IMG/VR virus record: IMGVR_UViG_3300043570_001980
Location: 124,001-188,000 of that record
Direction: 5' to 3' (one strand)
Length of the DNA: 64,000 bases
The notes under the pieces were generated by a model that searched no databases, was not told the origin of the DNA, and was given only the letters and a program-made list of their open reading frames with translations. Every line of letters starts with the position of its first letter. Position 1 is the stretch's first letter. Made by a program: the position numbers and the translations under genes. This document shows positions 19,464 to 55,705 of the stretch, one piece after another.

Positions 19464-19506
19464 GTGTTTGGAGTCTGTTCAACTTCCTAAACGAAGGCAT
19501 AGGGCT

Positions 19507-19743
19507 ATGCATGAACAGACTCCCTCTTATGCTACTGTACGGATTAGTTTTGATCCGTACAGTCACCACCAGGTCCAGACTTTTCTCAAAAAAGTCTACC
19601 AAGATTTTGGCAGAGATAAAAGTCGTTGGTACTACCAAAGCCCAATCCTAAATATGGATACTCAAGTTGATACATGGACTGTGGATTTTATTTTTAGAGA
19701 TCCACACGATGCTACTTTATTTGGCCTTAAATATCTAAGATGA
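19507..19743 (+). CDS. Hypothetical protein
   Basis: Start reassigned to MHEQ; C-terminal FRDPHDATLFGLKY. Confidence 0.6.
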   Translation: MHEQTPSYATVRISFDPYSHHQVQTFLKKVYQDFGRDKSRWYYQSPILNMDTQVDTWTVDFIFRDPHDATLFGLKYLR

Positions 19744-20111: not shown

Positions 20112-20129
20112 ATCAATAATTGCTATAAT
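20101..20129 (+). promoter_or_regulatory. Early sigma70 promoter
   Basis: TTGACC-17 nt-TATAAT. Confidence 0.88.
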
Positions 20130-20155
20130 ACAGTATAGTTAAACAAGGAGCCTAA

Positions 20156-24688: not shown

Positions 24689-24927
24689 ATATCTTTAGGT
24701 TTTTCAAATCAATTGAAAGTCCTGAGCCTTTGGTGGATGGAATGTACGCTGATCAATACAGTAATCAGCAGATTCGAGACTATATTCTTTCTAGCTATCA
24801 AAAAAGATTTCCAATACCTGCAGAAACTCCAGAAACACATCCCTGGAAGTTTGATCCGCTTGATCCGCCGCAGGACTGGAGATTTGACCCTTACTACGAA
24901 CTTTGGATAAAAGAAAAAAATGAATAA
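24679..24927 (+). CDS. Hypothetical protein
   Basis: Fills the gap; Pro/Trp-rich C-terminus; start uncertain. Confidence 0.5.
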   Translation: MGINIFRFFKSIESPEPLVDGMYADQYSNQQIRDYILSSYQKRFPIPAETPETHPWKFDPLDPPQDWRFDPYYELWIKEKNE

Positions 24928-25881: not shown

Positions 25882-26850
25882 ATGAAAATATTAGTAACAG
25901 GTGGGTTGGGCCTTATTGGTCATAACGTCATCTCAAGATTACAAAATCTTGACCACACAACCTCAATCATTGATAACAAAACAACCTACGGAATTATTCC
26001 GCAGAGTGAGTTGGATTACTTGATGGAAGAGCGTATTAAAAAAATCCACCATCCTGGTTTTTATAATGCATCTATCGAGACTGCAGACACAGTTGATTAT
26101 GTGATGCAGGTGCAACAACCCGAAGTAGTTGTACACATGGCCAGTTTCCCCCGACAAAAAGTAGTCAATGCCAATCCAGCAAATGGCAGTCGTGTTATGA
26201 TGGAAGGCTTGATCAATCTGCTTGAGAGTGCCAAAAAGCATGGTGTTCGTCGATTTGTTTACATTAGTAGCTCAATGGTATATGGCGACTTTACTGATCA
26301 AGTCGAAGAAGATGCTGTGTGTAACCCACAGGGTCAGTATGGTATTATGAAGCTGGCAGGAGAGTGGTTGGTCAAAGACTATGCTCGACGAACTGGCATG
26401 GAATTTGTTATCATTCGTCCCAGTGCTGTGTACGGACCCTTGGATGTGGAAGATCGTGTGGTTGCTAAATTTATGCTTACTGCCATGCGTGGTGGGACGT
26501 TAAAAGTAAACGGTGCCAACGAAACACTAGACTTTACCTATGTTGACGATGCCGCCGATGGCATTGTCGCCGCGGCCACCATGCCCGGTGCTAAAAATCA
26601 CACATTCAACATTACTAAATCACACTCTGTGTCTTTATTGCAAGCGGCAGAAATGATTGTAAGTATAGTAGGCAGCGGCGAGATCGAGTGTAGAGATAGA
26701 GATGCAGACTTTCCCAGTCGCGGTGCGTTAAATATTAATCAGGCTCGTGCCATGTTAGGTTACGATCCCAAAGTTGATGTTCATGAAGGATTTCAAAATT
26801 ACTACAGCTGGCTTAACAATTCCCTTTACTGGGCTCCGAAAACAGTATAA
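25882..26850 (+). CDS. NAD-dependent nucleotide-sugar epimerase/dehydratase (extended SDR)
   Basis: TGGLGLIG, SSSMVYG, YGIMK (YxxxK), DFTYVDD. Confidence 0.92.
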   Translation: MKILVTGGLGLIGHNVISRLQNLDHTTSIIDNKTTYGIIPQSELDYLMEERIKKIHHPGFYNASIETADTVDYVMQVQQPEVVVHMASFPRQKVVNANPANGSRVMMEGLINLLESAKKHGVRRFVYISSSMVYGDFTDQVEEDAVCNPQGQYGIMKLAGEWLVKDYARRTGMEFVIIRPSAVYGPLDVEDRVVAKFMLTAMRGGTLKVNGANETLDFTYVDDAADGIVAAATMPGAKNHTFNITKSHSVSLLQAAEMIVSIVGSGEIECRDRDADFPSRGALNINQARAMLGYDPKVDVHEGFQNYYSWLNNSLYWAPKTV

Positions 26851-27880
26851 CAACATCAAAGAAGAAATTCTAGATGCCACAGATCGTGTATTGCGATCTG
26901 GTAATCTCATGAATGGAATCTATACCAAAGAATTTGAAACATGGTTAGCCAAGAAAAACAATAGCAAATATGCTATAACATGTCATAGCGGAACACAGGC
27001 ATTAGAAATAATCGCCCAATACTACATAACAAGAGACTGGGATAGCCGTTGCCATGTGTTAGTTCCAGCAATTACATATCCAGCTACCATCAATGCATTT
27101 TTGCGCTCAGGATGGGACGTTACTATTGTTGATACAGATGCATATGGGATAATGGATCGAGATCATGCCATGCCTGAATTAGTTAATTACAATGCTATTG
27201 TGTTAGTTGGACTGTACGGTGCACCTATACGCAACGGTTGGGAACTTATGGCAAATATCATAATTGAGGATGCCGCACAACATTGGCTAAGTGACCGTGG
27301 TCGACGAAAAGGTCATGCGGCAGCTATTAGTTTTGATCCAATGAAAAATCTAAGTTGTTACGGCAATGGTGGTGCAGTAATCACGGACGACCCAAAGTTA
27401 CACGAATATGCGCTGGGGTGGAGAGACAATGGAAAACCTGGACATACCATGACTGGCAGCAATAGTCGTATGAGTGAAGTTGATTGTGCAACAATGATGG
27501 TTAAAACAAAATACATTGATCAATGGCAACAGCGTAGAAGTAAAATTGCAGGATATTGGATTGAACATTTTTCAAAACAAAACATTAGAACATTAACTGA
27601 CAAATCAAATTATGTCGATCATTGTAATCACAAGTTTGTTGTTGACATAGACAGTCGAAACGAAGTTAAAAAAGAACTAATGCTTAGAAAAATTGAAACA
27701 AAAGTACACTACGAACTTCCGTTACACGAAATTCCATTATATGAATCAATTGTCGGCCCTGGAATGTTTTCTAAAGCCAGTGCATTGGCCAGACGAGTAT
27801 TGAGTTTACCCATATACCCTGAGCTGACAGACTTAGAAGTGGAATACATTGCAGATCAACTGATTGATATAGTTAAATGA
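26774..27880 (+). CDS. DegT/DnrJ/EryC1/StrS PLP-dependent sugar aminotransferase
   Basis: SGTQAL, EDAAQ, SFDPMKNL, GNGG, LSLPIYP; start uncertain. Confidence 0.92.
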   Translation: MMFMKDFKITTAGLTIPFTGLRKQYNNIKEEILDATDRVLRSGNLMNGIYTKEFETWLAKKNNSKYAITCHSGTQALEIIAQYYITRDWDSRCHVLVPAITYPATINAFLRSGWDVTIVDTDAYGIMDRDHAMPELVNYNAIVLVGLYGAPIRNGWELMANIIIEDAAQHWLSDRGRRKGHAAAISFDPMKNLSCYGNGGAVITDDPKLHEYALGWRDNGKPGHTMTGSNSRMSEVDCATMMVKTKYIDQWQQRRSKIAGYWIEHFSKQNIRTLTDKSNYVDHCNHKFVVDIDSRNEVKKELMLRKIETKVHYELPLHEIPLYESIVGPGMFSKASALARRVLSLPIYPELTDLEVEYIADQLIDIVK

Positions 27881-29259
27881 CAAGATTAGGTTACACACAC
27901 AGCAAAGTCGAAGGCCCGACAAATGCAGACATTTTGCACCTAGACCCTGTGTCTCAACAGGTGTGTAAGTTACTGTCAGATGATCCATTTATTACTCAAA
28001 GAGAAATTGCAAAACAGCTATCAATCTCTGCCAACGAACTACTAGTAATATCTAGTAAGATCAGAGAAGATCAACCAGCTCAGAATTACATATTGTATCA
28101 TGGTGGCGGCACAAAATATTGGACCAATACAATCACTCCATTGCTGACAAACGGATCATTACATGCGGCCATTGATCACAGTTACATGTACCCAAATCGT
28201 ATCGGACTGTACACTGGTATGAGCTGTATGTTCTACTGCAACTTTTGCGGACGAAATCCTGTGGCCAAATACGAAAAGAAATTTGAGCAATATGGATTTG
28301 ATGTTTTCAAACAGATTATTGATCAAGACATTAAAACTGATGCATTCTGGGATGACCGATTTCGTATCAGTGGGGGCCTAGAGCCGCTGACCAACAAGTA
28401 TCTAGGCAACATTATTACCTACGGTGCCGAACGTGGATATAAAATGCAATTATACACCAACGGCTATATGATGACTCGGAAATACATAGAACAACATCCA
28501 GGAATGAAAGACCTTCATGCTGTTCGTTTTAGTTTGTATGGTGTTGATGAACAAAGTGCATTTAAAGTAACTCGTCATTCTGAGAGTTATCATCGTATTG
28601 TTGAAAATATCATTGAGTATATCAATTCAACACACAATGTTCGTGTGGGAGTTAATTGGATCATACTGCCTGGCCACTCAAAGGATGTTGTTAAGTTATT
28701 AAACATCATTGACTATATTAATTCACGGACCGTGCGTCCTGTGGATTTTGTAACATTGAGAGAAGACTTTAGTCAAAATGTGCGCATCATCAGCGACGAA
28801 GAAAGAGTGCATCTTGTTGATATTTTTAATTTGATTAAAGATTTTAAAACAAATAAATGGCCGGCCACACATTGGGATTTTGGATATGCACTAGAACCGC
28901 TGGTGCATGGAAAAAATTCTGGACCATTGTCAATGATTTCCTGGAAAGAAATGGTGCCAACTAGCTTTCCTCAAGTGGCTGTAGCAGTTGACGTCAAGGG
29001 AGATGTATATGTCTATCACGAAAGTGGATTCTTAGATCGACCAGGTGCTGAAAGATATATAATTGGAAACACAGTTAACAGTAGCATAGAAACCGTAGTG
29101 CAAGAATTTGTTAACTCTAAAAAAACAATAAGACCGTCGCCACCTGATGTTGGATATTTAGATGCATTCGACCATGTGGTAAGTAGATTAATCAATCAAG
29201 CTCGAGACGATGAAAAATTTGGAATCTCGTGGAACCAAGGACCAGTAAAATGTCGATAA
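27877..29259 (+). CDS. desII: DesII-like radical SAM dTDP-4-amino-4,6-dideoxyglucose ammonia-lyase
   Basis: KYWTNTITPL, GLYTGMSCMFYCNFCGR, SGGLEPLTN, LYTNG, LREDFS, FDHVV match the DesII pattern as recalled. Confidence 0.82.
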   Translation: MTRLGYTHSKVEGPTNADILHLDPVSQQVCKLLSDDPFITQREIAKQLSISANELLVISSKIREDQPAQNYILYHGGGTKYWTNTITPLLTNGSLHAAIDHSYMYPNRIGLYTGMSCMFYCNFCGRNPVAKYEKKFEQYGFDVFKQIIDQDIKTDAFWDDRFRISGGLEPLTNKYLGNIITYGAERGYKMQLYTNGYMMTRKYIEQHPGMKDLHAVRFSLYGVDEQSAFKVTRHSESYHRIVENIIEYINSTHNVRVGVNWIILPGHSKDVVKLLNIIDYINSRTVRPVDFVTLREDFSQNVRIISDEERVHLVDIFNLIKDFKTNKWPATHWDFGYALEPLVHGKNSGPLSMISWKEMVPTSFPQVAVAVDVKGDVYVYHESGFLDRPGAERYIIGNTVNSSIETVVQEFVNSKKTIRPSPPDVGYLDAFDHVVSRLINQARDDEKFGISWNQGPVKCR

Positions 29260-30347
29260 CAATACCATACGCAAATTTATATAGCGAATACCTAGAAGTA
29301 AAAATTCCAGTTGACCAAGCCATTGAACGTTGTATTACAAACAGTTCATTCATTGGCGGGGAAGAAGTTTTAAAATTTGAAACTGCCTGGAAAGACTACA
29401 CGCAGTCAGAAGATTGTGCCGGAGTAAGCAGTGGCACAAGTGCATTGATGTTGTCTTTGTGGGCCGTGGGAGTTCGTCCCAGCGACGAAGTGCTTGTTCC
29501 AAGTATGAGCTTTGTTGCGTCAGCTGAGTGCGCTAGTCAACTAAATGCTCGTCCTCGTTTTATTGACATTGATCAATACTATACTATGGACCTTGATCAA
29601 ATTGAGTCAAAACTTACAAATAAAACCAAAGCAATTATTGTGGTGGATCTTTATGGTCAAACTGTGGATATAAAGAAGCTCAAGGAGATTGCCAACGGCA
29701 TCCCAATCATACAAGATGCGGCTCAAAGTTCTGGATGCAGGTACCTTGGAAATTCAATTGGCAGCCAGGCAGATTTAACATGTTTTAGTTTTTACCCAGG
29801 AAAAAATTTAAGTGCCATGGGAGATGCAGGTGCAGTTACAGGTCGTCAGGAATTAGTTAAACTTGTTAAAATGCTTAGAGATCACGGAAGAAAAGAAAAA
29901 TACGTACACGAGACTATTGGCTGGAATGAAAGACTAGATTCTATGCAGGCAGCGATTTTATCAGCCAAACTAGATCATTTAGATACCTGGAATCAACGAC
30001 GTATAGAAAATGCATCTGTTTATTACAATATGTTATCTAACTGTGACAAAATACAATTGCCAAAAGTAAACAGTAATGTGAGTACCCACGTTTATAATCA
30101 ATTTGTTATTGCAACAGATTGTAGAAATGAATTAAAAGAATTTCTTTCAAGTCGTGGAATTGAAACTGGTATACAATTTCCACTGGCATTACATAAACAA
30201 CCGGTGTATGCTAGAATGGCAGGTACGGATAGTTTTCCAAATAGTGAACGGCTAGCAGACTCGTGTTTGAGTTTGCCAGTACATGCACAAATTACCACTG
30301 CACAGGCAGAAACTGTGGCCAAAGCTGTAATAGATTTTTTTAACTAA
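29250..30347 (+). CDS. DegT/DnrJ/EryC1/StrS aminotransferase (DesV/FdtB-like)
   Basis: DAAQSSG, FSFYPGKNLSAMGDAG, GWNERLDSMQAAIL. Confidence 0.93.
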   Translation: MSITIPYANLYSEYLEVKIPVDQAIERCITNSSFIGGEEVLKFETAWKDYTQSEDCAGVSSGTSALMLSLWAVGVRPSDEVLVPSMSFVASAECASQLNARPRFIDIDQYYTMDLDQIESKLTNKTKAIIVVDLYGQTVDIKKLKEIANGIPIIQDAAQSSGCRYLGNSIGSQADLTCFSFYPGKNLSAMGDAGAVTGRQELVKLVKMLRDHGRKEKYVHETIGWNERLDSMQAAILSAKLDHLDTWNQRRIENASVYYNMLSNCDKIQLPKVNSNVSTHVYNQFVIATDCRNELKEFLSSRGIETGIQFPLALHKQPVYARMAGTDSFPNSERLADSCLSLPVHAQITTAQAETVAKAVIDFFN

Positions 30348-31971
30348 CGTTGCCGTAACGTTCTGAGAAATAATTTCTTAACCATTGCCAGTTAAAACTA
30401 TTTTTTCTGTATTCATAGTTGTCTTTATATGCTAGATAAAATTCTCGGCCGTCTTTGGCTCCTATCAATGCCCACTCAGCATAGTCGCCGTCAGCAACTG
30501 TTTCCCAAATATTAATTCTATAATCAGTTTCAATTGTTGGAGTTCGAGACTGTATATCATATAATTTACTGACTTCTCTAAATGCAGTTCTCCAGGTGTG
30601 GTATGGACTTGTGTTAAAATTACCATAGGTGCTGATAATTGGCACAACTTCGTGTGGGAAACTCATTGTATAATCTAGTCCAAATTCCTGGCCAATGTTA
30701 TCTAGTATAAGATTACAATTGTACATGATAACAGCCATTTCTCCGTAGACTAATTTGTTTACACGATTCTCGCTGTAAAAGATATAGTGTTTAGGCTGTT
30801 GAAAATAGTCAGGCTGGAATGTAAAATCAAAATCTGGGTGTAACTCTGTCTTGCCAAATACTGCAAAGTACCAGGGTGTTTGACTAGCCTTAGCAGCCTC
30901 GGCCAGAGCATTCTCCATTCCAACCACACCATGCACACGTTTAGCTCGAGGAAATTTTGTTAACAATTTTTCATAGTTTACATCTGCCTCGGGCTCATCG
31001 TAGCTAATAAACACAATATCTTGCAATGCAAGATCATGACTAATCTGAGTTTTATCAATGTACGGATAGTCGTAGACTTGTGTGTTAATTGTAGACAATG
31101 CTGTTCGTGGAATTAATGCACAATCGTTATTTGGGGACAATGTAATAACTGTCTTAGTTAGTTCTCTCCATAGATTAACAGTTGGGTACACCATTGGAGG
31201 ATTTTGAACAGTAAACAATCCTACCGGACCATAAAAAGAGTCAGGATCTAATGCAGTAACTTGTGTGTCGCAGGAATGTTGTATTACTGGTACTGGCCTG
31301 CGTTTAACTTGCAAGTCAACAAAGTTTAAATCATACCACTCGAGTAATTCTTTACCCTTAATTCTTTCAATAAACGTTGGCACATGCATTAAAAATGTAT
31401 CACCAAACTTTTGTTCATTGCTAGGAAATACATGTAACAACTCTTTTTGCCAAGGATCAGGATGCCATGTAAAATCAAAATTAGTATAATCACAGATTGT
31501 AGAGCAAATCCAAATGTATTCAAGATTGTCATTGCTAGCTGTTTTAGCAATGCGTGTTAGAGTGTCAAGATAATTGTCAAAATATCTAACCACTTTTTTA
31601 ATTGTGATTTTTTCCGACAGAGTATTCAATGCTAATTCTAGAGAATTATCCATATGATCTATTAAGTATATATCGCTAGATTGTCTAGTGAGAACAACCA
31701 TGTCTGTATGGTAATTGGTATCCGTGAATCCAGTTTTTGGTACTAGATAAGTACCCGAATCTTTTTGCCACTGACTAGGAAATACATGCTGTTGATTTGC
31801 TTGCCAGGGTGCTGGTTCCCAAAGAAAATTAAACTCAGAATAGCTCGATAAGTAATTTACGACCCAACAATATCGAGTGCGACTTAGTTCGCAGGCCTGC
31901 TCCGTGCTTGTTACTGCACGTTCATGCACAAACAATCCTGGTTTTTTTCCTATATAGAATATATCAAACAT
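30340..31971 (-). CDS. Multi-domain glycosyltransferase-like protein (paralog of 50067)
   Basis: C-terminal DIVFISYDEP...AKRVHGV...WRTAFRE; two internal F-x-W-x-P-x-PWQ...HVFPS repeats. Confidence 0.6.
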   Translation of the reverse strand: MFDIFYIGKKPGLFVHERAVTSTEQACELSRTRYCWVVNYLSSYSEFNFLWEPAPWQANQQHVFPSQWQKDSGTYLVPKTGFTDTNYHTDMVVLTRQSSDIYLIDHMDNSLELALNTLSEKITIKKVVRYFDNYLDTLTRIAKTASNDNLEYIWICSTICDYTNFDFTWHPDPWQKELLHVFPSNEQKFGDTFLMHVPTFIERIKGKELLEWYDLNFVDLQVKRRPVPVIQHSCDTQVTALDPDSFYGPVGLFTVQNPPMVYPTVNLWRELTKTVITLSPNNDCALIPRTALSTINTQVYDYPYIDKTQISHDLALQDIVFISYDEPEADVNYEKLLTKFPRAKRVHGVVGMENALAEAAKASQTPWYFAVFGKTELHPDFDFTFQPDYFQQPKHYIFYSENRVNKLVYGEMAVIMYNCNLILDNIGQEFGLDYTMSFPHEVVPIISTYGNFNTSPYHTWRTAFREVSKLYDIQSRTPTIETDYRINIWETVADGDYAEWALIGAKDGREFYLAYKDNYEYRKNSFNWQWLRNYFSERYGNVS

Positions 31972-35299: not shown

Positions 35300-35300
35300 A

Positions 35301-40747: not shown

Positions 40748-40845
40748 TTGTAGATAAATGGATCTCGTTTACGTAACTCTTTGAGTTTTTTTCTATATCT
40801 TATTTCAAGTTTAATTCTATTGATTAAGTTTTTTAACCAGTTCAT
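40744..40845 (-). CDS. Small basic peptide (33 aa, not in the ORF track)
   Basis: MNWLKNLINRIKLEIRYRKKLKELRKRDPFIYK; ATGA overlap with the carbamoyltransferase start. Confidence 0.7.
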   Translation of the reverse strand: MNWLKNLINRIKLEIRYRKKLKELRKRDPFIYK

Positions 40846-40846
40846 A

Positions 40847-49508: not shown

Positions 49509-50073
49509 TTAAAATATTTTGTAAAAAATCAAAAAGTTGCTCGGTACCTTTAACATTTAGATGTCCGTCATCAAGTCGACCATTTGGACCAATCATGGGA
49601 TATTCTAACTGGCGAACCGTTTTTCTGTTTTCCCAGGAAAATCCAAGAACTTTTTTGTTACAAGAATTTAAAAAACTAATTGATGTGTCGATTAACATGT
49701 CACTTAAATTTTCACTATACGGAGGACCAAAAACAGAATAAAAATATTTGTACATCTCAGTGTGTGCAATATCAAGTGTTGCTGGCTCAAGAGCCAGTCC
49801 TTTACCGTGAAACCCTGTAAAAAAATCTAAATTCTGATCGTTATATTTTAATCCAAATCTAGACGAATATGTAAAACCTAATACAAATATATCGGCATTT
49901 TGAAAATTTTGATAAGCATCAAATGCAATAGACATATTACTTTTACCTTGCCTTGAGTTGTCAATTACTTGATACCCGCCGCGAGTATTAAATAGGCTTC
50001 CTAAAGAATCTTGTCTTTTAAGACCTTGCCCGTAGGTCAAACTACATCCGTCAAGGTATAATCGTGTTACCAT
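49501..50073 (-). CDS. SGNH-like hypothetical protein
   Basis: DGCSLTYG, GKSN and DDGH motifs. Confidence 0.65.
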   Translation of the reverse strand: MVTRLYLDGCSLTYGQGLKRQDSLGSLFNTRGGYQVIDNSRQGKSNMSIAFDAYQNFQNADIFVLGFTYSSRFGLKYNDQNLDFFTGFHGKGLALEPATLDIAHTEMYKYFYSVFGPPYSENLSDMLIDTSISFLNSCNKKVLGFSWENRKTVRQLEYPMIGPNGRLDDGHLNVKGTEQLFDFLQNILNE

Positions 50074-50993
50074 CCTTCTTGTTCCCTTATTACATCTAGT
50101 TCGCGTGTCATTATACCTCGGTTGTGCCAGTTGCTCAGATAATGATGTTTAAAAAATTCACTTTCTTCTCGACCCAACACAATGACAGGTAAATCCAGTT
50201 GTTGATTTAGATCGGCAGCAATTCTATCAAACACGATTTCTGGAGTGTGATCTTTGACAGTATCCCACAAAGTTGCTAACGCATCAAAATTTTGAACTAG
50301 CCGATAATCCCAGTCGGTTAGCATGGTCATGTAAGTGCCCATTCTGCTGCCGGCAATGGCCCAGGCACCGTTTTCAGCATCAGTTCCTACATTATGCCAA
50401 ATTGTAAGATGATCAAAATTACGTTTATGCACACGATCTCTAAATTCAGCCACTGATGGTTTATGACCTTTGTCTAGGCACATCTTGACACCTTCTCTAA
50501 ATCCTGCTCGCCAGGCCTGGAACGGTGTTCCGTTTGGATAGGTAGTACTGTAACAATCATACATGGCAAAGTAATTAGGCTCAAAACAAAACTCAACAAG
50601 ACTTTCATCTCGTCCATCTGTGTTTTCATGAGTTTTCATATTCCACACAAACTCTCGAGTCCAAGAACTTAATCCTCCATTACCATACATTAATCCGTTG
50701 ATATGATTACGTGCTCTCCAACGAAACACTGAATTGTGTTTATCATCATCTTTAAAATCTAATGTTAGATTAAAAAATTTCGAATCTGGCAAATTGTCGC
50801 CGTCGATTAAAATAAATCGTTCTGTTTCGCTGACATCACCAGCGGCTTTGTGTGCGGCATCTGAGCCTTTAACACCATCCACACGTTTGGCCCAGGGAAC
50901 CATGTTTTTAATCTTGACCCAGAATTCTTCTTTCTGTGGTTCATCATAGCTGAGGTAAATCACATCAAGATCAGCAATATCAACTTGTTTCAT
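50067..50993 (-). CDS. GT-A fold glycosyltransferase-like protein
   Basis: DVIYLSYDEP, FILIDGD (DxD), YGNGG, WRAGFREG. Confidence 0.65.
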   Translation of the reverse strand: MKQVDIADLDVIYLSYDEPQKEEFWVKIKNMVPWAKRVDGVKGSDAAHKAAGDVSETERFILIDGDNLPDSKFFNLTLDFKDDDKHNSVFRWRARNHINGLMYGNGGLSSWTREFVWNMKTHENTDGRDESLVEFCFEPNYFAMYDCYSTTYPNGTPFQAWRAGFREGVKMCLDKGHKPSVAEFRDRVHKRNFDHLTIWHNVGTDAENGAWAIAGSRMGTYMTMLTDWDYRLVQNFDALATLWDTVKDHTPEIVFDRIAADLNQQLDLPVIVLGREESEFFKHHYLSNWHNRGIMTRELDVIREQEGW

Positions 50994-51327
50994 TAGTTCT
51001 TAAACTCCATTTTATATTAGGTATAGAATTATCTACAACAACACAGATATCCCTAGGATCACAGGGTATTCCTGTGTCTCCTGGCACCAATTTATTAGTG
51101 ATAGTGTGTTTTATATAGATTAATTTATTGTCGACTACTCGAACATTACTTGGCAACAAGGAAAATGTTTCTCTGTCGATTTCAATATAATTACCTGGCA
51201 CATCCTCCATGCTATAAAATAAAGGAAAGCCTGCATCATCATGATATAAACGATAAAATATTGGTTTTGGTGTCGGTAGATCCCATTCGTTGAATGCTTT
51301 CCAAAAATTTTCTGTAGTTTCATTCAT
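50980..51327 (-). CDS. Hypothetical protein
   Basis: Coupled ORF. Confidence 0.7.
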   Translation of the reverse strand: MNETTENFWKAFNEWDLPTPKPIFYRLYHDDAGFPLFYSMEDVPGNYIEIDRETFSLLPSNVRVVDNKLIYIKHTITNKLVPGDTGIPCDPRDICVVVDNSIPNIKWSLRTNETS

Positions 51328-52099
51328 TGGCTGTGGCCCAATCTTTTATATGATAATGAAAGAATCCACTTTGTGTAATTGTGTGTATCCTTAATCCAGG
51401 GTCTGCATTTTCCCAGACTAGTTCTTTGCTCCAATTGCCGGTATGTGTGGGTATAATATAACGCTTCATATGAACAATTGTAGGACCAAAATTTGTTGGT
51501 AATACACAATTCTCAATGCCGACTATTTTGGCAGCCATGGCATATACTAAATCAGTTGTAGGGATATCGTCGGGGAATTTTAATAATTTTTTAAAGGACT
51601 CCCAGTCAGAAAATATTGCCCTTACTAAATCAAAAAATTCCTTGGCTGTTTTACTCACACGCCAGTAAGTTATAGCATTGTAAACATCAGGCAAGTTGTT
51701 AGAATCAAAAACTTTTCTGTAATATCTTGACTTACTTATCTGTCCGTAAAAATCTCTACAGCCTTGACTGATTGCCACATCTTGGTGTTCAAACAATGTC
51801 CACCAGTGGTCCACAGCACTTGTGGCAATCATGTCTGCTTCTAGTTTAATAGTTTGTCTATAAGGACTAGCGGCAAATACTTGCCAGTCGTTGGCATATC
51901 CTCCTAGGTCACCGTGTGGCAACGGAATCACATGATCGAACACAGGGTCACTGCATTGTTTTACTGACAGTACAGAGATATTGGCATCTGGATGCCACTG
52001 GCGAATAGATCTAGCAAGTTGTACAGCACAACCCAAGTAGTCAACAGAGTCAGTGTCAATTGCCGGAATAAGATAACCACGTTCAGCAAGGATTGGCAA
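51320..52099 (-). CDS. GT-A (GT8-like) glycosyltransferase-like protein
   Basis: DYLGCAVQLARSI, SPYRQTIKLEAD, VHMK. Confidence 0.6.
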   Translation of the reverse strand: MPILAERGYLIPAIDTDSVDYLGCAVQLARSIRQWHPDANISVLSVKQCSDPVFDHVIPLPHGDLGGYANDWQVFAASPYRQTIKLEADMIATSAVDHWWTLFEHQDVAISQGCRDFYGQISKSRYYRKVFDSNNLPDVYNAITYWRVSKTAKEFFDLVRAIFSDWESFKKLLKFPDDIPTTDLVYAMAAKIVGIENCVLPTNFGPTIVHMKRYIIPTHTGNWSKELVWENADPGLRIHTITQSGFFHYHIKDWATANE

Positions 52100-52889
52100 C
52101 GATGGCTCCTAGTTGTTGTTTGCCCATGGCGTGAAAGTCACAGTTTTTAATATCCACCCAACGAGGTTTTCCTTCACTGTTATTAAAATCAATTCTATAA
52201 TAGTCTTGACTAACTTGTGACAGTTTATGTGAAGGTGTTACACTGGCCAAACTCCAGGGAATTGCTGGATGATCCGTTGTGTGTCCATTTAACATGCAAA
52301 GAGAAATACTTAGTGCATGGTCGTTACGATAAACAGACCTACCTGTTCCGTAGATATTTTTATAATGTTGCCAATTTTGTTTAATCATTGTCATTGACTC
52401 AAATAGCAATTGTGATTCTTGGCTGCGTTTAAAATACATCACTGTGGCCCACCACATGGGCATTTTATGTCGACCGAAATAATTTAAATCTTCAAAGTCT
52501 TGTGTGCCTGTGAGGTCGTAGGCCCACCGATGACATAAAAAATTTTGAGTTGTATTCAATGCACATTTTAATTGATTACTAGCTACTACATAATCGGCGT
52601 CAAGCACTAATGTGTTATCCCAGGGACTTAGACTATATGCATCGGTTCTGTTAGAATTAAACCACGGTACAGACTTACCAATGTCATCAAAGAAACGATA
52701 GCCGCCGGCATCAGTTGATGCAGTGATCACTTGATCAAACTTATTAAGATAACCCGAATCGGACACGTTGGTGACCACTGCTACCGGAATACCCAGGTGA
52801 CGTTTTATATTATCAGCTGACCAGGCCGCTAGGGCAAGATAATCAATGTTGCTGTTGTTGAATGCAAAGATCAACGCACCAGTTGTCAT
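52083..52889 (-). CDS. GT-A (GT8-like) glycosyltransferase-like protein
   Basis: DYLALA, SPWDNTLVLDADY (DxD), RND, HAMGK. Confidence 0.65.
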   Translation of the reverse strand: MTTGALIFAFNNSNIDYLALAAWSADNIKRHLGIPVAVVTNVSDSGYLNKFDQVITASTDAGGYRFFDDIGKSVPWFNSNRTDAYSLSPWDNTLVLDADYVVASNQLKCALNTTQNFLCHRWAYDLTGTQDFEDLNYFGRHKMPMWWATVMYFKRSQESQLLFESMTMIKQNWQHYKNIYGTGRSVYRNDHALSISLCMLNGHTTDHPAIPWSLASVTPSHKLSQVSQDYYRIDFNNSEGKPRWVDIKNCDFHAMGKQQLGAIVANPC

Positions 52890-53194
52890 CTTTTTTTGCC
52901 TAATTCTTCATACTCGAGTAACCATGCATTCATTTGTTCCTGCCAGCGACCAAGGGCCAAGTATTGTAATTCTGTTGGATTGATTTTTACAGGATTACCA
53001 TACAAATCTAAAATTACAATATCATCGTCCACTGAGCAGGCATGTAACAATGTCAATAACTCAGGACCTGCCTGCCACATTCCTCCGTTATAAGCAAATA
53101 TCATTTTGCCCTGGTACTTTTCTTTAAGGATGCGTTTTGTGGCCGCATGTTCAAAACGGGCACGTGAGTGTGCAATCAAGTTGTCATTATTCAT
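52886..53194 (-). CDS. Hypothetical protein (possible tail-fibre assembly factor)
   Basis: First gene after the structural block; coupled to the GT gene. Confidence 0.6.
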   Translation of the reverse strand: MNNDNLIAHSRARFEHAATKRILKEKYQGKMIFAYNGGMWQAGPELLTLLHACSVDDDIVILDLYGNPVKINPTELQYLALGRWQEQMNAWLLEYEELGKKR

Positions 53195-53219
53195 ATAGTC
53201 AATTATACAGGGTATATTG

Positions 53220-53248
53220 AAAAAAGTAAAGGGCCCAGAGGCCCTTTT
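53220..53248 (-). terminator. Intrinsic terminator (possibly bidirectional)
   Basis: AAAGGGCC-caga-GGCCCTTT with flanking A/T tracts. Confidence 0.7.
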
Positions 53249-53266
53249 GGTAAGATCGTTACAATA

Positions 53267-54253
53267 TTAAGATACTGTTGCAGCCACAGTTGGGGTTCCC
53301 CAGGCGGCCGTAGTAAGATAAGTTGTTGATGGTGGAATATACGATACCAGTGTAGCCGGAGCAGAGCCAAAAGATACACCAGAGCTGTCAGTCCCGCCAC
53401 TGATGTTATCAGGACCAAAGCTACTGCCCGGATCAACCCAGGTTGTTGTTAATACCAACTGTGTTCCTGATCCAGCTGTTCTAGCATTAAGTTCAATATA
53501 TTGATTGGTATATGGTGCAGTATCAGCAAACTGTTTATATAGTACAGTATTACTGGTTGTTAATTGATACCATCCAGTGGTAGTTGCTAGTGTAGTAGGC
53601 GATCCTGATCCACCAGATTTTGTAGTGCCAGTATAACTTGTGCCATTGATAGTCTGGGCGGCACTATTAACTCGTCCTGTGATAAAAATACTACCGCACA
53701 GGGTTGAAGCCAAGTCATTCCATTCAGTATCAGCAACTGTGCCAGTTGACGACTTGCCAACTTGCCATTTAACTATGCCGCCAGCATTCCAAAAGTAACG
53801 TGCGGCATCTGCTGATGCAAATGTAACAGTATTAGTAAATGTAATTGTCCAAGCAGACGCACCTGAACCAGTTCCTGAAGTTTTTGCACTTGTGCCTGTC
53901 CAGGCAGTATACTGAGTTCCACTGCCGACTGCATTACCTCTGTTGGTGGTTAAATTGGTCAAGTCTGTGTTTAAATTTGATAAGATGTTAATTGTATCAC
54001 CAGCAGTAGGCGCTGATCTCGATGTAATTCCTGTGCCTTGGTGGCTGGCCATGCTTGATATGTTATTAACCAGTGTTGCCCACTGAGTGGCTGATACTAT
54101 TCCCAAGGCACTCACTGTTGACACAGCACTCTGACCGTATCCCTTGTCAGTTGACCCTGCCGCCCAAATATCGTTAACGTTGGCACCTGCTGTAGTGCTA
54201 ACAAAACCGTTGTAGTCGGTTGCCTGAATTAATCCACCTGATGAGTACGTCAT
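53267..54253 (-). CDS. Virion structural protein (tail/baseplate-associated)
   Basis: Thr/Gly/Ser-rich; GYGQ, TVTFASADAARYFWNAGG. Confidence 0.7.
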   Translation of the reverse strand: MTYSSGGLIQATDYNGFVSTTAGANVNDIWAAGSTDKGYGQSAVSTVSALGIVSATQWATLVNNISSMASHQGTGITSRSAPTAGDTINILSNLNTDLTNLTTNRGNAVGSGTQYTAWTGTSAKTSGTGSGASAWTITFTNTVTFASADAARYFWNAGGIVKWQVGKSSTGTVADTEWNDLASTLCGSIFITGRVNSAAQTINGTSYTGTTKSGGSGSPTTLATTTGWYQLTTSNTVLYKQFADTAPYTNQYIELNARTAGSGTQLVLTTTWVDPGSSFGPDNISGGTDSSGVSFGSAPATLVSYIPPSTTYLTTAAWGTPTVAATVS

Positions 54254-54274
54254 TTTCTGTTGTCCTAGTTATTT

Positions 54275-55705
54275 TTATTTGGTTGCAACAATGGCTTCCA
54301 CTGTGCCTTCGTTGATGTCTAATTTGTCTTCCAAGGAACGACCGATAACATTAAATGCTGACGCTTCTCCAGGTTTGGCTGAACGAGCTAACCCAAAACC
54401 TGCTGAAACTAATCTGTCGCCTTTACGAACCATACCAACCACACGAACCGGAACTCGACCTGTCATTGCAATTGGTGGATGTGTTTCGTCTGTGCCGGCA
54501 GCTGAATTCATTAGATAGGCTGCTTGTGTACTTATAACACCAAACACATTTTCTGACAATTCAGTAAGAGAAACAGTGATTTCGGCAATGCCGCCGAGCT
54601 CAACAACTGTTCCAGCTGGGTAGGTAGTGTCTGAAGCAAAACGTTCAGCAACGTCAGCATATTGAGCTGAAGTAGCCTTGGCAAATACAGTATTAAAGTA
54701 ACCACTGCTTGAACCAATATTGCCAACACCGTTGCCGGCAGCATTGACAATGCTACCAAGCGTCACAGAACCAGTGGTTACACTTAGGTTTCCACCAGTG
54801 ACATTACCTGTTACTGCAAGAGTGGTTGGAATAGACACAGCAGAAGTTGCACCATTTACTGCCAGTACTGTGGTTACTACGCCTCCATCATTGACTTTGA
54901 GTGTTAGGTTGGCATCTTGTGTTTGATTCTGAAGAACAACTTCTGAAGTGGCTGTTGTAACAGAAATCTTTGCATCCTGGTCAGCGCCGACAGTTAACCC
55001 TGTGTCATTTAAGATACCCAGTGTTCCTGAAGTTGTATCATTGCTGACGGCACTTAAAAAGTCTGTGCTGTCAAGTCCATCTAGAGTTTGTGCATTAGTA
55101 GCACTTCCACGGAACAATGCGCTTGTAACAGTGGTGCTTAGTTGTATACCTGGACCAACTGTGCTGAATCCAGTGATTGCAACTTGGGGAGTGAATGTTG
55201 CATCTTTTGAAACAATACCAACAACAGTATCTTCAACGTATAGTTTAACAACCACGTGATCTATTGAAACGTTATCTGTTACTGTTTCGACCACAGCACC
55301 CGACGTTCCTTGGCCAGCAGTTGATGCTGGACCAATTAAAATAAAGGCGCTACCGTTGTAGGCTTTAAGTTGTTGATTTACTGTGTCAAACCATAAATCT
55401 CCAGCTACGTTACTAGTTGGTGCTGTAGAACTTGCAGTTGAAGCTGAGATAACTTTAAATGTTGTACCATTGTACACTTTCATTGTGGCGGTAGTTTTAT
55501 CCCACCAAAGTTGTCCAGTTAAAGGTGCACCTGGTGCAACAGTATTTGCTCCACTTTCTAACAAGTGTATAAAGTTTTCGTCTAAAAACTCACCGTAACC
55601 AGCATAGTTTTTACCCACTAGGGTCATGCTAGAACTAGTATTGATGGTACCATCTGCAATTGTTGCAAAGATTGATCCATCAGTTAAATTGATTGTATAT
55701 GCCAT
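54275..55705 (-). CDS. Tail fibre-like protein with a C-terminal chaperone-type domain
   Basis: LVGKNYAGYGE..ENFIHLLE, G(Q/D)LW(W/F)D repeats, SAQYADVAERF...GRVPVRV. Confidence 0.75.
   Translation of the reverse strand: MAYTINLTDGSIFATIADGTINTSSSMTLVGKNYAGYGEFLDENFIHLLESGANTVAPGAPLTGQLWWDKTTATMKVYNGTTFKVISASTASSTAPTSNVAGDLWFDTVNQQLKAYNGSAFILIGPASTAGQGTSGAVVETVTDNVSIDHVVVKLYVEDTVVGIVSKDATFTPQVAITGFSTVGPGIQLSTTVTSALFRGSATNAQTLDGLDSTDFLSAVSNDTTSGTLGILNDTGLTVGADQDAKISVTTATSEVVLQNQTQDANLTLKVNDGGVVTTVLAVNGATSAVSIPTTLAVTGNVTGGNLSVTTGSVTLGSIVNAAGNGVGNIGSSSGYFNTVFAKATSAQYADVAERFASDTTYPAGTVVELGGIAEITVSLTELSENVFGVISTQAAYLMNSAAGTDETHPPIAMTGRVPVRVVGMVRKGDRLVSAGFGLARSAKPGEASAFNVIGRSLEDKLDINEGTVEAIVATK

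What the first reader, a model, noticed from the sequence alone, without database searches (positions are those of the whole stretch)
25882..55705. ~28-kb glyco-tailoring island contiguous with tail genes: putative virion glycan armour system
Seen: from 53194 down to 35301 genes overlap or abut on the strand of the Ser/Thr-rich tail proteins. The window holds five ET..TEK paralogs whose motif resembles the GT10 fucosyltransferase signature (FEN...YITEK), two ISYDE proteins, two GT8-like proteins and three SGNH-like proteins. Inference: a late-expressed pathway builds and chemically diversifies a glycan on virion proteins (or the host surface). The paralog expansion suggests arms-race diversification.
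Basis: inference. Interest (0 to 1): 0.72.

Follow-up and report, generated by a model that had tools for sequence, protein, structure and literature searches.

The report
Radical-SAM sugar-tailoring operon in lake jumbo phage
A 342-kb lake phage, like more than a hundred uncultured relatives, carries a conserved ~25-kb operon that appears to build an amino/guanidino, carbamoylated sugar conjugate using five ancient radical-SAM paralogs, a new glycosyltransferase family and a very conserved 33-residue peptide; what it decorates is unknown.

Summary
Genes from 35301 to 53194 overlap or abut. Five ORFs carry the ET..TEK block, two share ISYDE, and the adjacent tail-fibre-like proteins are Ser/Thr-rich. 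The GT8-like and SGNH-like calls fail.

- a desosamine-like sugar module (4,6-dehydratase-like SDR, two DegT aminotransferases, a DesII-like radical SAM);
- an amidinotransferase and a NodU/TobZ-type carbamoyltransferase;
- five radical SAM enzymes with an N-terminal twitch domain (NF033640);
- two Trp-halogenase-like flavoenzymes and an aryl-CoA ligase;
- a 33-aa ORF under strong purifying selection.

One ET..TEK protein models as a GT-B glycosyltransferase. Its nearest solved folds are T4 DNA beta-glucosyltransferase and GT10 fucosyltransferases.

The core recurs in at least 143 IMG/VR contigs, and each radical SAM paralog is its own ortholog group. This is an old fixed pathway, not a recent arms-race expansion. 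Only a slot between the amidinotransferase and carbamoyltransferase genes varies.

A terminator-like hairpin and a promoter-like site separate the operon from the tail genes.

Best reading (about 0.4): cytoplasmic synthesis and radical tailoring of a cationic glycan on a phage-made protein or peptide. Rivals are a free aminoglycoside-like or peptide-derived product, DNA hypermodification, and host-envelope remodelling.

The parts
24920..25870 (+). TauE/SafE-family membrane protein at the left edge. Accessory: it has no counterpart in the related loci examined.
   Evidence: Pfam PF01925 E 1.8e-13; 0 related loci
25882..26850 (+). SDR, NDP-hexose 4,6-dehydratase/epimerase family. Core gene.
   Evidence: PF01370 E 1.5e-44 and PF16363; TIGR01181 E 7e-34, below its cut-off; found in 33-36 related loci
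26774..27880 (+). DegT/DnrJ/EryC1 sugar aminotransferase 1. Core gene.
   Evidence: PF01041 E 1.5e-57; 41-47 related loci
27877..29259 (+). DesII-like radical SAM (sugar 4-amino deaminase type), with CxxxCxxC at residue 117. Accessory.
   Evidence: TIGR04426 340 bits against a cut-off of 450; PDB DesII 8hzv E 2.4e-68; only 3 related loci
29229..30347 (+). DegT aminotransferase 2, 30% identical to aminotransferase 1. Its orthologs are found only in close relatives.
   Evidence: PF01041 E 2.8e-98; ortholog group in 4 loci
30340..31971 (-). 543-aa protein. The N-terminal half has DF-x-W-x-P repeats and an unknown fold. The C-terminal half is an ISYDE domain in which the DGD motif is replaced. Core gene, variable in length (435-1143 aa).
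   Evidence: no Pfam, NCBIfam, PHROG or PDB hit; nearest Atlas clusters are virus-only
31970..33085 (+). ET..TEK family glycosyltransferase-like protein. Core gene.
   Evidence: paralog of the modelled protein; motif; 44-50 loci
33034..34245 (+). ET..TEK family protein. The product in public databases is 386 aa, starting near 33085. GT-B fold.
   Evidence: AF2 pLDDT 91, pTM 0.89; Foldseek hits are all GT-B enzymes; VIA Z 12.2 to T4 BGT and 11-11.7 to GT10 FucTs; 2791 database homologs with no Pfam
34238..35299 (+). Amidinotransferase (AGAT/StrB1/HsvA/SxtG superfamily) with an invariant C-terminal Cys-Cys. Core gene.
   Evidence: profile against PDB: AGAT E 3.3e-18, HsvA 2.6e-14, StrB1 1.9e-13, SxtG 2e-13; phrog_25854; 37 loci
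35301..36539 (-). Trp-halogenase-family flavoenzyme with a degenerate WxWxIP motif (WLWDTG). Accessory cargo of the variable slot.
   Evidence: PF04820 E 1.3e-91; motif check; only 4 related loci
36536..37795 (-). Trp-halogenase-family flavoenzyme with GxGxxG, WIWEIP, and the Lys and Glu regions aligned to RebH. It is about 110 aa shorter than Trp halogenases. Accessory.
   Evidence: PF04820 E 3.8e-92; RebH E 1.2e-59 and cyanophage VirX1 1.1e-49
37770..39260 (-). Aryl/benzoate-CoA ligase family adenylating enzyme. Accessory.
   Evidence: PF00501 and PF13193; TIGR02262 372.6 bits against a cut-off of 375.25; 4 loci
39251..40747 (-). NodU/CmcH/TobZ-type carbamoyltransferase. Core gene.
   Evidence: PF02543 E 4.5e-36 and PF16861 E 6.8e-48; 72-74 loci
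40744..40845 (-). 33-aa basic ORF. Its 3' end overlaps the carbamoyltransferase start by 4 nt, and its start lies 1 nt from the stop of the upstream gene. The C-terminal ...RKRDPFIYK is nearly invariant. It is the most conserved gene of the operon.
   Evidence: 74 loci at a median of 88% identity; 52 nucleotide versions, invariant residues encoded by up to 6 codons, 15649 synonymous against 8534 non-synonymous pairwise codon differences
40847..41935 (-). 362-aa core protein of unknown function. The model shows a cyclophilin-like beta-barrel with a helical insertion.
   Evidence: AF2 pLDDT 84.6; no Foldseek PDB match; VIA Z 8-9.7 to many cyclophilins (marginal); 82 of 82 loci; 527 clusters in the representative library; next to an N-twitch rSAM in distant contig L108 as well
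41904..43208 (-). N-terminal-twitch radical SAM paralog 1.
   Evidence: NF033640 284.7 bits against a cut-off of 170; own ortholog group in 81 loci
43195..44400 (-). N-terminal-twitch radical SAM paralog 2.
   Evidence: NF033640 339.9 bits; 69 loci
44397..45746 (-). N-terminal-twitch radical SAM paralog 3. The true start is probably downstream of the listed ORF start.
   Evidence: NF033640 394.6 bits; 67 loci; alignment A2
45643..47127 (-). N-terminal-twitch radical SAM paralog 4. The true start is probably downstream of the listed ORF start.
   Evidence: NF033640 299.6 bits; 75 loci
46967..48118 (-). ET..TEK family glycosyltransferase-like protein. Core gene.
   Evidence: 43-49 loci
48093..49508 (-). 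N-terminal-twitch radical SAM paralog 5.
   Evidence: NF033640 317.1 bits; 62 loci
49501..50073 (-). 190-aa protein of unknown function. Poorly conserved.
   Evidence: no family hit; 2-6 loci
50067..50993 (-). ISYDE family protein with an invariant LIDGDN (DxD-like) motif. Possibly a GT-A-type transferase. Core gene.
   Evidence: alignment A3; one near Atlas cluster is auto-named 'GT2-like domain'; no PDB or Pfam hit; at least 8000 database clusters, all unnamed
50980..53194 (-). Four small ORFs of unknown function (115, 259, 268 and 102 aa) at the promoter-proximal end of the operon. The 259-aa and 268-aa proteins are weak paralogs. They are variable among relatives.
53202..53247 (-). Terminator-like hairpin (53247-53228) directly followed by a sigma-70-like promoter match (53230-53202), in the only intergenic gap between the tail-fibre-like genes and the operon.
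   Evidence: consensus matches only; the total number of promoter-like sites is not above chance
53267..55705 (-). Two Ser/Thr-rich tail-fibre-like proteins (328 and 476 aa). The second has a C-terminal intramolecular-chaperone-like region. They are candidate acceptors, not enzymes.
   Evidence: S+T 31% and 23%; PF11962 weak, and tail-fibre PHROGs

Best explanation
The island is a self-contained phage operon that works in the infected cell's cytoplasm. It takes a host nucleotide-hexose, since the phage has no nucleotidyltransferase of its own.

Proposed steps:
1. The SDR makes a 4-keto-6-deoxy sugar.
2. A DegT enzyme aminates it.
3. In this phage and its closest relatives, the DesII-like radical SAM and the second DegT re-route it to a 3-amino-3,4,6-trideoxy sugar, as in desosamine biosynthesis.
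4. The amidinotransferase converts an amine to a guanidine.
5. Three ET..TEK GT-B transferases and the ISYDE proteins assemble the sugars on an acceptor.
6. The carbamoyltransferase and five N-terminal-twitch radical SAM enzymes tailor the product. Plausible reactions, by analogy with the C-terminal-twitch sugar enzymes BtrN, HygY and SpeY, are epimerisation, oxidation or deoxygenation.
7. The variable slot adds strain-specific decoration. Here that is probably a (halogenated) aromatic acyl group, made by the two halogenase-like enzymes and the aryl-CoA ligase.

The acceptor is most likely a phage-made protein or peptide. One candidate is the Ser/Thr-rich tail proteins encoded next door. The other is the ultra-conserved 33-aa peptide in the middle of the operon.

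Shown: the gene families, the GT-B fold, conservation, the operon structure, and selection on the peptide. Inferred: the order of steps, the sugar's identity, the radical SAM chemistry and the acceptor.
For: The GT-B fold of the ET..TEK family comes; protein and peptide glycosyltransferases (SdgB, EarP, GtfA, POFUT3/FUT10, POGLUT) are prominent among the matches.

All five radical SAM paralogs keep CxxxCxxC, GGEP and four N-terminal cysteines.

In Bacteroidota genomes the same radical SAM family again occurs as adjacent paralogs. Its neighbours there are glycan genes: carbamoyltransferase, SGNH-like proteins, a polysaccharide deacetylase, GT11-like, GT2 and GT-C transferases, methyltransferases, PhyH/WelO5 oxygenases, and a T9SS protein with an endosialidase-chaperone domain.

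The operon is tightly packed. It is conserved in at least 143 viral contigs with one-to-one orthologs. It lies 14-19 kb from a baseplate/tail marker in 5 of 5 large relatives.

The genome has no NTP_transferase, so host sugar nucleotides are required.

None of the three known entry enzymes for DNA hypermodification is present: ThyA-type hydroxymethylase, TET/JBP and DpdA/TGT.

The 33-aa ORF is under strong purifying selection.

A homologous amidinotransferase of cyanophage S-SCSM2R sits among GTs and 2OG oxygenases and was detected in that phage's virion proteome (PMC12801897).
Against: No acceptor is demonstrated. A terminator-like and promoter-like pair separates the operon from the tail genes, so co-expression with structural genes is not implied.

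The tail-fibre-like proteins themselves are not conserved in the relatives' loci, whereas the pathway is.

The best single structural match of the GT-B model is T4 DNA beta-glucosyltransferase (Z 12.2).

The enzyme set (DegT, twitch radical SAM, GT-B, amidinotransferase, carbamoyltransferase) equally resembles aminoglycoside pathways that make free small molecules.

The complex prediction of the peptide with its two neighbours gave no answer.

The ISYDE fold and the chemistry of the N-twitch radical SAM enzymes are unverified. No member of NF033640 is characterised as far as I could find.
Confidence: 0.4

Rival explanations
1. The operon makes a free small molecule. This would be either an aminoglycoside-like guanidino/carbamoyl pseudo-oligosaccharide, or a product carved from the 33-aa peptide in the manner of a RiPP or mycofactocin and then glycosylated. 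It would act on the host or on competing microbes.
For: Nearly every core enzyme type has an aminoglycoside counterpart: DegT-family aminotransferases, the twitch radical SAM BtrN, GT-B transferases, the StrB1 amidinotransferase (PDB 1bwd, E 1.9e-13) and the TobZ-type carbamoyltransferase. A small, extremely conserved peptide sits among radical SAM enzymes with SPASM/twitch-type clusters. Iyer et al. proposed a secondary metabolite as one reading of an analogous cyanophage cluster (PMC7824862), and the S-SCSM2R authors call the homologous genes 'antibiotic synthesis genes'. The cyclophilin-like fold of the 362-aa neighbour is shared with Pictet-Spenglerases and prolyl isomerases (marginal).
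Against: Pfam found no cyclitol synthase, and no exporter or resistance gene beyond the non-conserved TauE protein. No RiPP recognition element, protease or leader/core architecture was detected. The peptide is conserved over its whole length and is absent from the bacterial N-twitch clusters and from L108. The complex prediction gave no answer.
Confidence: 0.2
2. The operon is a DNA (or tRNA) hypermodification pathway. The GT-B enzymes would put an amino/guanidino sugar on phage nucleic acid to block host nucleases. The basic peptide would help bind the nucleic acid.
For: The pathway is a fixed core trait of the clade, as DNA modifications usually are. The top VIA match of the GT-B model is T4 beta-glucosyltransferase (Z 12.2), and T4 alpha-glucosyltransferase ranks tenth (Z 10.8). 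Cationic groups are typical of phage DNA hypermodifications (general knowledge). ThyX lies immediately upstream both here and in the distant relative L001. The peptide has 12 Lys/Arg in 33 residues.
Against: The 95%-complete genome has no ThyA-type hydroxymethylase, TET/JBP or DpdA/TGT. ThyX implies ordinary dTMP. The Z-scores for T4 BGT and the GT10 FucTs are nearly equal, so the fold does not discriminate. The bacterial relatives of the radical SAM enzymes sit in polysaccharide or glycoprotein loci. Deoxy-amino sugars are not known on DNA.
Confidence: 0.15
3. The operon remodels the host cell envelope (LPS, capsule or surface glycoprotein) during infection. The effect would be to exclude other phages or to prevent re-adsorption of progeny, as proposed for cyanophage LPS clusters.
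For: This is the published interpretation of cyanophage glycan clusters that contain GTs, carbamoyltransferases and a halogenase (PMC7824862). Bacterial N-twitch radical SAM clusters lie in surface-glycan contexts. A variable tailoring slot exists.
Against: Pfam found no flippase, polymerase, polyprenyl-phosphate transferase, signal peptide-bearing or membrane GT in the island. Superinfection-exclusion cassettes are usually variable, whereas this core is conserved one-to-one across a clade that presumably infects different hosts.
Confidence: 0.15

Closest known systems
Cyanophage sugar/amino-acid tailoring cluster (e.g. S-SSM6a), described by Iyer et al. 2021 (PMC7824862)
   Same: It is a jumbo-phage cluster combining carbamoyltransferases, a halogenase, oxidative tailoring enzymes and sugar enzymes. 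Its function is unresolved, either glycan decoration or a secondary metabolite.
   Different: The cyanophage cluster uses 2OG-Fe dioxygenases and a HemK-like methylase for tailoring. This operon uses five N-terminal-twitch radical SAM enzymes. It also adds an amidinotransferase, the ET..TEK GT-B family, a cyclophilin-like protein and a 33-aa peptide. Here the halogenases are accessory, not core.
Campylobacter phages CP220/CPt10 module with five radical SAM genes plus a glycine amidinotransferase (PMC2853527)
   Same: It is a phage module with the same unusual pairing of five radical SAM genes and an amidinotransferase. Its function is unknown.
   Different: The CP220 radical SAM genes are not NF033640 members: the best score is 31 bits against a cut-off of 170, and the N-terminal twitch is not matched. 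Our amidinotransferase found no Campylobacter phage by tblastn. The resemblance is analogy, not demonstrated homology.
Desosamine pathway of Streptomyces venezuelae (DesIV, DesI, DesII, DesV; established biochemistry)
   Same: The same four enzyme types lie in a row at 25882-30347: a 4,6-dehydratase-type SDR, an aminotransferase, a DesII-type radical SAM and a second aminotransferase. DesII structure 8hzv matches at E 2.4e-68.
   Different: The DesII-like protein scores below the equivalog cut-off (340 against 450 bits). No DesVI-type N,N-dimethyltransferase or thymidylyltransferase was found. The DesII and second DegT pair is present only in the closest relatives.
Aminoglycoside biosynthesis (StrB1 amidinotransferase, TobZ carbamoyltransferase, BtrN twitch radical SAM, GT-B transferases)
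   Same: The same set of enzyme superfamilies occurs in one cluster.
   Different: No cyclitol synthase was detected. The twitch domain is N-terminal rather than C-terminal. The GTs belong to a new family without Pfam membership. The context is viral.
GT10 alpha-1,3-fucosyltransferases (H. pylori FucT, FUT9, FUT11, FUT13) and T4 DNA glucosyltransferases
   Same: They share a compact GT-B fold (VIA Z 11-12) and a C-terminal acidic ...TEK motif resembling the GT10 signature.
   Different: There is no Pfam GT10 or T4-glucosyltransferase hit. Sequence identity is about 8-10%. The donor and acceptor are unknown.
Virion glycosylation in mycobacteriophages, and glycan synthesis encoded by chloroviruses and giant viruses (recalled from the literature, not checked here)
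   Same: The virus encodes sugar-nucleotide tailoring enzymes and GTs near structural genes, and they work in the cytoplasm.
   Different: As far as I recall, those systems use few GT-A/GT-B enzymes and no radical SAM enzymes, amidinotransferase or companion peptide. Glycosylation of this phage's virion is not shown.
VirX1, the cyanophage flavin-dependent halogenase (PDB 6qgm)
   Same: It is a viral Trp-halogenase-family enzyme and matches 36536-37795 at E 1.1e-49.
   Different: The proteins here are about 415 aa and lack the C-terminal ~100 residues. One has a broken WxWxIP motif. They sit beside an aryl-CoA ligase.

Membership tests
   AF2 pLDDT 91. All significant Foldseek hits are GT-B enzymes. 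VIA Z is 11.1-11.7 to FucT, FUT13 and FUT9.
   No Pfam family at E <= 0.01 for any of the four proteins scanned (121-1083 had no NCBIfam or PHROG hit). Only the ET..TEK core of the motif is present.
   Needs an enzyme assay.
N-terminal-twitch radical SAM (NCBIfam NF033640) | Score above the curated cut-off, a CxxxCxxC radical SAM cluster, and N-terminal auxiliary-cluster cysteines | tested here: met
   The five proteins score 285-395 bits against a cut-off of 170. The invariant cysteines, in the numbering of 44397-45746, are C60, C78, C121, C124, C168, C172 and C175, plus GGEP.
DesII (TIGR04426, dTDP-4-amino-4,6-dideoxy-D-glucose ammonia-lyase) | Equivalog-level score | tested here: not met
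   339.7 bits against a cut-off of 450. It is nevertheless clearly the closest family, and PDB DesII matches at E 2.4e-68. It should be filed as DesII-like.
Flavin-dependent tryptophan halogenase | Pfam PF04820, GxGxxG, WxWxIP and the catalytic Lys/Glu regions | tested here: inconclusive
   36536-37795 has all motifs and aligns with the RebH Lys and Glu regions. 35301-36539 lacks WxWxIP. Both lack the C-terminal ~100 aa of Trp halogenases, so the substrate is probably not free Trp.
Amidinotransferase (AGAT/StrB1) | Profile similarity over the whole fold, and the C-terminal catalytic Cys | tested here: met
   E 3.3e-18 to AGAT, with matching stretches at both ends of the protein. The Cys-Cys in the C-terminal ...SCCTQD... 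is invariant. The His and Asp of the triad were not mapped.
NodU/CmcH/TobZ carbamoyltransferase | Both the Kae1-like N-terminal and the YrdC-like C-terminal domains score above the gathering cut-offs | tested here: met
   PF02543 125 bits against 24; PF16861 163 bits against 27.
   No hit inside the window. The GDS-containing 34238-35299 has hhalign probability 0.5% against bacterial SGNH-like proteins.
   The only hits are at genome 286,100 and 289,491, outside the window.
RiPP biosynthetic cluster | A precursor peptide with a leader and core, plus a maturase with a peptide-recognition element | tested here: inconclusive
   A conserved 33-aa ORF is present. No RRE/PqqD-type domain was reported by Pfam or NCBIfam. 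The peptide-neighbour complex prediction gave no answer.
Known phage DNA hypermodification systems | An entry enzyme: ThyA-type dC/dU hydroxymethylase, TET/JBP dioxygenase or DpdA transglycosylase | tested here: not met
   None was found in the 95%-complete genome.
Virion glycosylation system | Glycan covalently attached to capsid or tail proteins | not testable with these tools
   Only gene adjacency and the Ser/Thr-rich neighbours are available.

The most novel reading that the evidence does not exclude
The 33-aa peptide is the scaffold or acceptor of the pathway. The phage would make a radical-SAM-tailored, guanidino- and carbamoyl-glycosylated peptide conjugate, a viral glyco-RiPP or cofactor-like molecule. 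The five N-terminal-twitch radical SAM enzymes and the cyclophilin-like protein would act on the peptide-sugar conjugate. This would be a class of product not known from any virus, and it would give the uncharacterised NF033640 radical SAM family its first function.
Probability: 0.15. Interest if true: 0.9.

Novelty: new variant of a known kind. Interest (0 to 1): 0.72.

Why it matters
Phage-encoded glycan or 'secondary-metabolite-like' clusters are known but almost none has an assigned product. This one is unusually large, and it is fixed across an abundant clade of freshwater jumbo phages. Its genes have thousands of unnamed homologs in public metagenomes.

It also brings together several families with no known function:
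- the N-terminal-twitch radical SAM enzymes;
- the ET..TEK GT-B family;
- the ISYDE family;
- a cyclophilin-like protein;
- a 33-aa peptide.

Working out the product would show why aerobic-lake phages invest in five oxygen-sensitive enzymes. It would assign chemistry to a whole radical SAM subfamily. It could also reveal a new kind of virion, DNA or peptide modification. Vibrio phages K566/K567 carry a related cluster of four N-twitch radical SAM genes and may offer an experimental entry point.

Tried and rejected
1. Megablast of the island against 50,697 phage records found no match. tblastn of the ET..TEK protein against the same records also found none. Cultured phages that share the neighbouring phrog_11259 baseplate/tail marker gene (Atu_ph07, Phosso, E. 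coli and Klebsiella jumbo phages) did not appear as matches.
2. Profile searches against PDB sequences were empty for the ET..TEK, ISYDE, 362-aa and 543-aa families. The radical SAM profile gave only generic superfamily hits; the best, 8vpo, is a cyclopropyl synthase.
3. hhalign of the ISYDE profile against a bacterial GT2 found no relationship. GT-A membership remains only a lead, from the DGD motif and an automatic Atlas cluster name.
4. SGNH hypothesis for 34238-35299: rejected.
5. Complex prediction of the 33-aa peptide with the 362-aa protein and the carbamoyltransferase gave 'no answer'. It is not evidence either way.
6. A peptide-like small ORF was sought in the three bacterial N-twitch loci and in L106-L108. 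None was found.
7. In-frame stops seen in some relatives' homologs were checked for stop-codon recoding. All three stop codons occur. In the examples I inspected they fall in genes whose listed ORF start is over-extended or at positions that look like gene ends. I read this as an alignment artefact, not recoding.
8. The alignment-based scan of genome contigs failed for lack of conserved blocks. The single-protein scan found only phage contigs binned into a 'Haliscomenobacter' MAG.
9. Literature searches for NF033640 or for a characterised N-terminal-twitch enzyme found nothing specific.
10. RNA evidence. One riverine metatranscriptome has a 157-nt, 99%-identical contig in the carbamoyltransferase gene. 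Another metatranscriptome has more than 200 pieces from relatives across 38500-44400. DNA carry-over cannot be excluded, so I do not count this as proof of transcription.

Full report
CONTEXT. The window is bases 124,001-188,000 of a single 341,990-bp viral contig that CheckV rates 95% complete. It has 25 tRNA genes and a tmRNA at the left end of the window. At the right end is a 2430-aa virion protein beside a gene (55761-56366) whose homologs occur in Agrobacterium phage Atu_ph07, Sinorhizobium phage Phosso and many E. coli and Klebsiella jumbo phages. Near-identical DNA occurs in at least 20 lake-water metagenome runs. The organism is an uncultured freshwater jumbo phage. Megablast of the island against 50,697 phage records finds nothing.

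CHECKING THE OBSERVATION. From 35301 to 53194 every junction on the minus strand is an overlap or a 1-nt gap. A regular-expression scan finds the ET..TEK block in exactly five ORFs: 121-1083, 9222-10397, 31970-33085, 33034-34245 and 46967-48118. All five share a downstream pattern. Four are BLAST-significant paralogs. The fifth is linked only weakly. The two ISYDE proteins are real relatives. The two tail-fibre-like proteins next to the island are 31% and 23% Ser+Thr.

The GT8 and SGNH claims fail. The Pfam GT8 and SGNH models hit the genome only outside the window. The one island protein with a GDS triplet is an amidinotransferase.

WHAT THE GENES ARE. On the plus strand, four genes at 25882-30347 reproduce the enzyme logic of desosamine biosynthesis:
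- an NDP-hexose 4,6-dehydratase-type SDR;
- a DegT aminotransferase;
- a DesII-like radical SAM (PDB DesII E 2.4e-68, but below the NCBIfam equivalog cut-off);
- a second DegT.

After them come a 543-aa minus-strand gene, two ET..TEK genes, and a 353-aa protein. A profile search shows the 353-aa protein to be an amidinotransferase of the AGAT/StrB1/HsvA/SxtG superfamily (E 3e-18).

The minus-strand operon, read from 53194 down to 35301, encodes in order:
- four small proteins of unknown function;
- an ISYDE protein with an invariant LIDGDN motif;
- a 190-aa protein of unknown function;
- five radical SAM enzymes, with a third ET..TEK gene lying between the first and second;
- a 362-aa protein of unknown function;
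- a 33-aa ORF;
- a NodU/TobZ-type carbamoyltransferase;
- an aryl-CoA ligase;
- two Trp-halogenase-family flavoenzymes.

All five radical SAM enzymes exceed the cut-off of NCBIfam NF033640, 'twitch domain-containing radical SAM protein'. All keep four N-terminal cysteines, the CxxxCxxC cluster and GGEP.

FOLDS. The 386-aa ET..TEK protein models confidently (pLDDT 91). Every significant Foldseek match is a GT-B glycosyltransferase, and protein and peptide glycosyltransferases are prominent: SdgB, EarP, GtfA and POFUT3/FUT10. An independent aligner ranks T4 DNA beta-glucosyltransferase first (Z 12.2), followed by four GT10 fucosyltransferases (Z 10.9-11.7); T4 alpha-glucosyltransferase is tenth. 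There is no sequence-family membership, and the fold does not say whether the acceptor is a protein, a glycan or DNA.

The 362-aa protein also models well (pLDDT 84.6). It has no Foldseek match in the PDB. The wide aligner suggests a cyclophilin-like barrel with a helical insertion (Z 8-9.7), which is only marginally above background.

THE 33-AA ORF. The peptide at 40744-40845 overlaps the carbamoyltransferase start by 4 nt, and its own start lies 1 nt from the stop of the 362-aa gene. It is found in 74 related loci. With a median identity of 88% it is the most conserved gene of the operon. Among 52 distinct nucleotide versions, the C-terminal stretch YRKKLKELRKRDPFIYK is almost invariant, although single residues are written with up to six codons. 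Synonymous codon differences outnumber non-synonymous ones about two to one. It is a real gene under strong purifying selection. Its role is unknown. A complex prediction with its two neighbours gave no answer.

COMPARATIVE GENOMICS. The 362-aa protein alone identifies 143 IMG/VR stretches, of which 80 loci were fetched. They include genomes of 315-345 kb, one with terminal repeats. Clustering the ORFs of 82 loci shows that each of the five radical SAM paralogs is a separate ortholog group, present in 62-81 loci. The GT-B paralogs, the ISYDE proteins, the SDR, the first DegT, the amidinotransferase and the carbamoyltransferase are likewise one-to-one. The paralogy is therefore ancient and fixed, which contradicts recent arms-race diversification.

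What does vary is a slot between the amidinotransferase and carbamoyltransferase genes, 0-4 kb long in different relatives. In this phage and its nearest kin it holds the two halogenase-like genes and the CoA ligase. Elsewhere it holds further radical SAM genes, DUF6071 proteins or unknowns. The DesII-like gene and the second DegT are also confined to close relatives. The picture is a conserved core pathway with strain-specific tailoring.

In five of five large relatives the operon lies 14-19 kb from the baseplate/tail marker gene, as it does here.

TRANSCRIPTION UNIT. The only non-coding gap, 53195-53266, contains the strongest terminator-like hairpin of the region, immediately followed by the best sigma-70-like promoter match. 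Both are on the operon's strand. These are consensus matches only. Their position suggests that the operon is transcribed separately from the tail-fibre-like genes upstream of it.

OUTSIDE THE CLADE. NF033640 proteins were found in 3 of 300 sampled Bacteroidota genomes, always as two to four adjacent paralogs. Their neighbours there are:
- a carbamoyltransferase;
- several SGNH-like proteins;
- a polysaccharide deacetylase;
- GT11-like, GT2 and GT-C transferases;
- methyltransferases and a B12 radical SAM;
- PhyH dioxygenases and a WelO5-type halogenase;
- a T9SS-secreted protein with an endosialidase-chaperone domain.

That is a glycan or glycoprotein tailoring context. It is the main reason I favour a glycoconjugate product.

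A distant metagenomic contig (L108) again pairs an N-twitch radical SAM with a member of the 362-aa family. Cultured Vibrio phages K566/K567 carry four N-twitch-like radical SAM genes in a row.

The literature offers three parallels, all without an assigned product:
- a cyanophage cluster with carbamoyltransferases and a halogenase (PMC7824862);
- the Campylobacter phage CP220/CPt10 module of five radical SAM genes plus an amidinotransferase (PMC2853527), whose radical SAM genes are not of the N-twitch family;
- cyanophage S-SCSM2R, whose amidinotransferase homolog (34% identity) lies among GTs and oxygenases and was detected in the virion proteome.

WEIGHING THE MECHANISMS. The genome lacks a sugar nucleotidyltransferase, so the pathway must start from host NDP-sugars. 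It also lacks all three known entry enzymes of phage DNA hypermodification, and it encodes ThyX next to the island. This lowers the DNA reading but does not exclude it. The island has no flippase, polymerase or lipid-carrier transferase. That argues against export to the host surface and for a cytoplasmic acceptor.

I therefore commit, at about 0.4, to cytoplasmic assembly and radical tailoring of a cationic (amino/guanidino, carbamoylated, here probably aroylated) deoxy-sugar glycan on a phage-made protein or peptide. The acceptor would be either the neighbouring tail proteins or the 33-aa peptide. A free aminoglycoside-like or peptide-derived molecule (0.2), DNA or RNA hypermodification (0.15) and host-envelope remodelling (0.15) remain open.

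VERDICT. The system is a new variant of the poorly understood class of phage-encoded glycan or metabolite clusters. It is widespread, conserved and experimentally tractable, and it deserves follow-up.

Noticed in passing
window 1694-12365: There is an array of 25 tRNA genes covering most amino acids, followed by a tmRNA gene (11944-12365). ARAGORN marks it 'tmRNA*' and gives the tag peptide ANDSQFALAA.
   Followed up: no
window 14400-15476: The phage encodes a TctC/Bug-family periplasmic solute-binding protein (PF03401, E 3.7e-31). From memory, this family is greatly expanded in Betaproteobacteria, so it may hint at the host.
   Followed up: no
window 18363-21448: A MoxR-type AAA ATPase gene (18363-19463) and a DUF2201 metallopeptidase/VWA gene (20156-21448) lie close together, and ThyX lies at 22705-23376. 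DUF2201 and ThyX also lie directly upstream of the operon in the distant relative L001.
   Followed up: partly
window 13439-14338 and 56532-63824: A 299-aa protein with a DUF4214 domain shares a 98-residue segment (40% identity) with the N-terminal part of the 2430-aa virion protein.
   Followed up: no
genome 282,700-289,700 and 800-1,270 (outside the window): There is a second group of glycosyltransferase-like genes elsewhere in the genome. GT8-like hits lie at 286,100 and 289,491, weak GT2-like hits lie at 282,792-288,852, and a clear GT2 lies at 804-1268.
   Followed up: no
L086/L087 (G001 contigs C1 and C3): A 6.9-Mb MAG labelled Haliscomenobacter sp. EUL_031 contains two long contigs (183 kb and 148 kb). 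Each carries a set of six N-twitch radical SAM genes, five of them at the operon. This is either phage DNA binned with a bacterium or a hint at a Bacteroidota host.
   Followed up: partly
L109 (Vibrio phage K566, record 161,548-168,284): A cultured 255-kb Vibrio phage has four adjacent N-twitch-like radical SAM genes among hypothetical proteins. BLAST detects no GT-B, carbamoyltransferase or 362-aa homolog there.
   Followed up: partly
L098 (G080 contig C2, about 1,210,600-1,216,900): A Bacteroidota chromosome has five PhyH-type dioxygenase paralogs, a WelO5-type halogenase and a methyltransferase in tandem beside two N-twitch radical SAM genes. This is another paralog-rich tailoring locus.
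   Followed up: no
window 30340-31971 and relatives: The 543-aa protein family ranges from 435 to 1143 aa among relatives. It carries repeated DF-x-W-x-P motifs in its N-terminal half. Its ISYDE domain has lost the DGD motif that is kept in the 308-aa paralog.
   Followed up: partly
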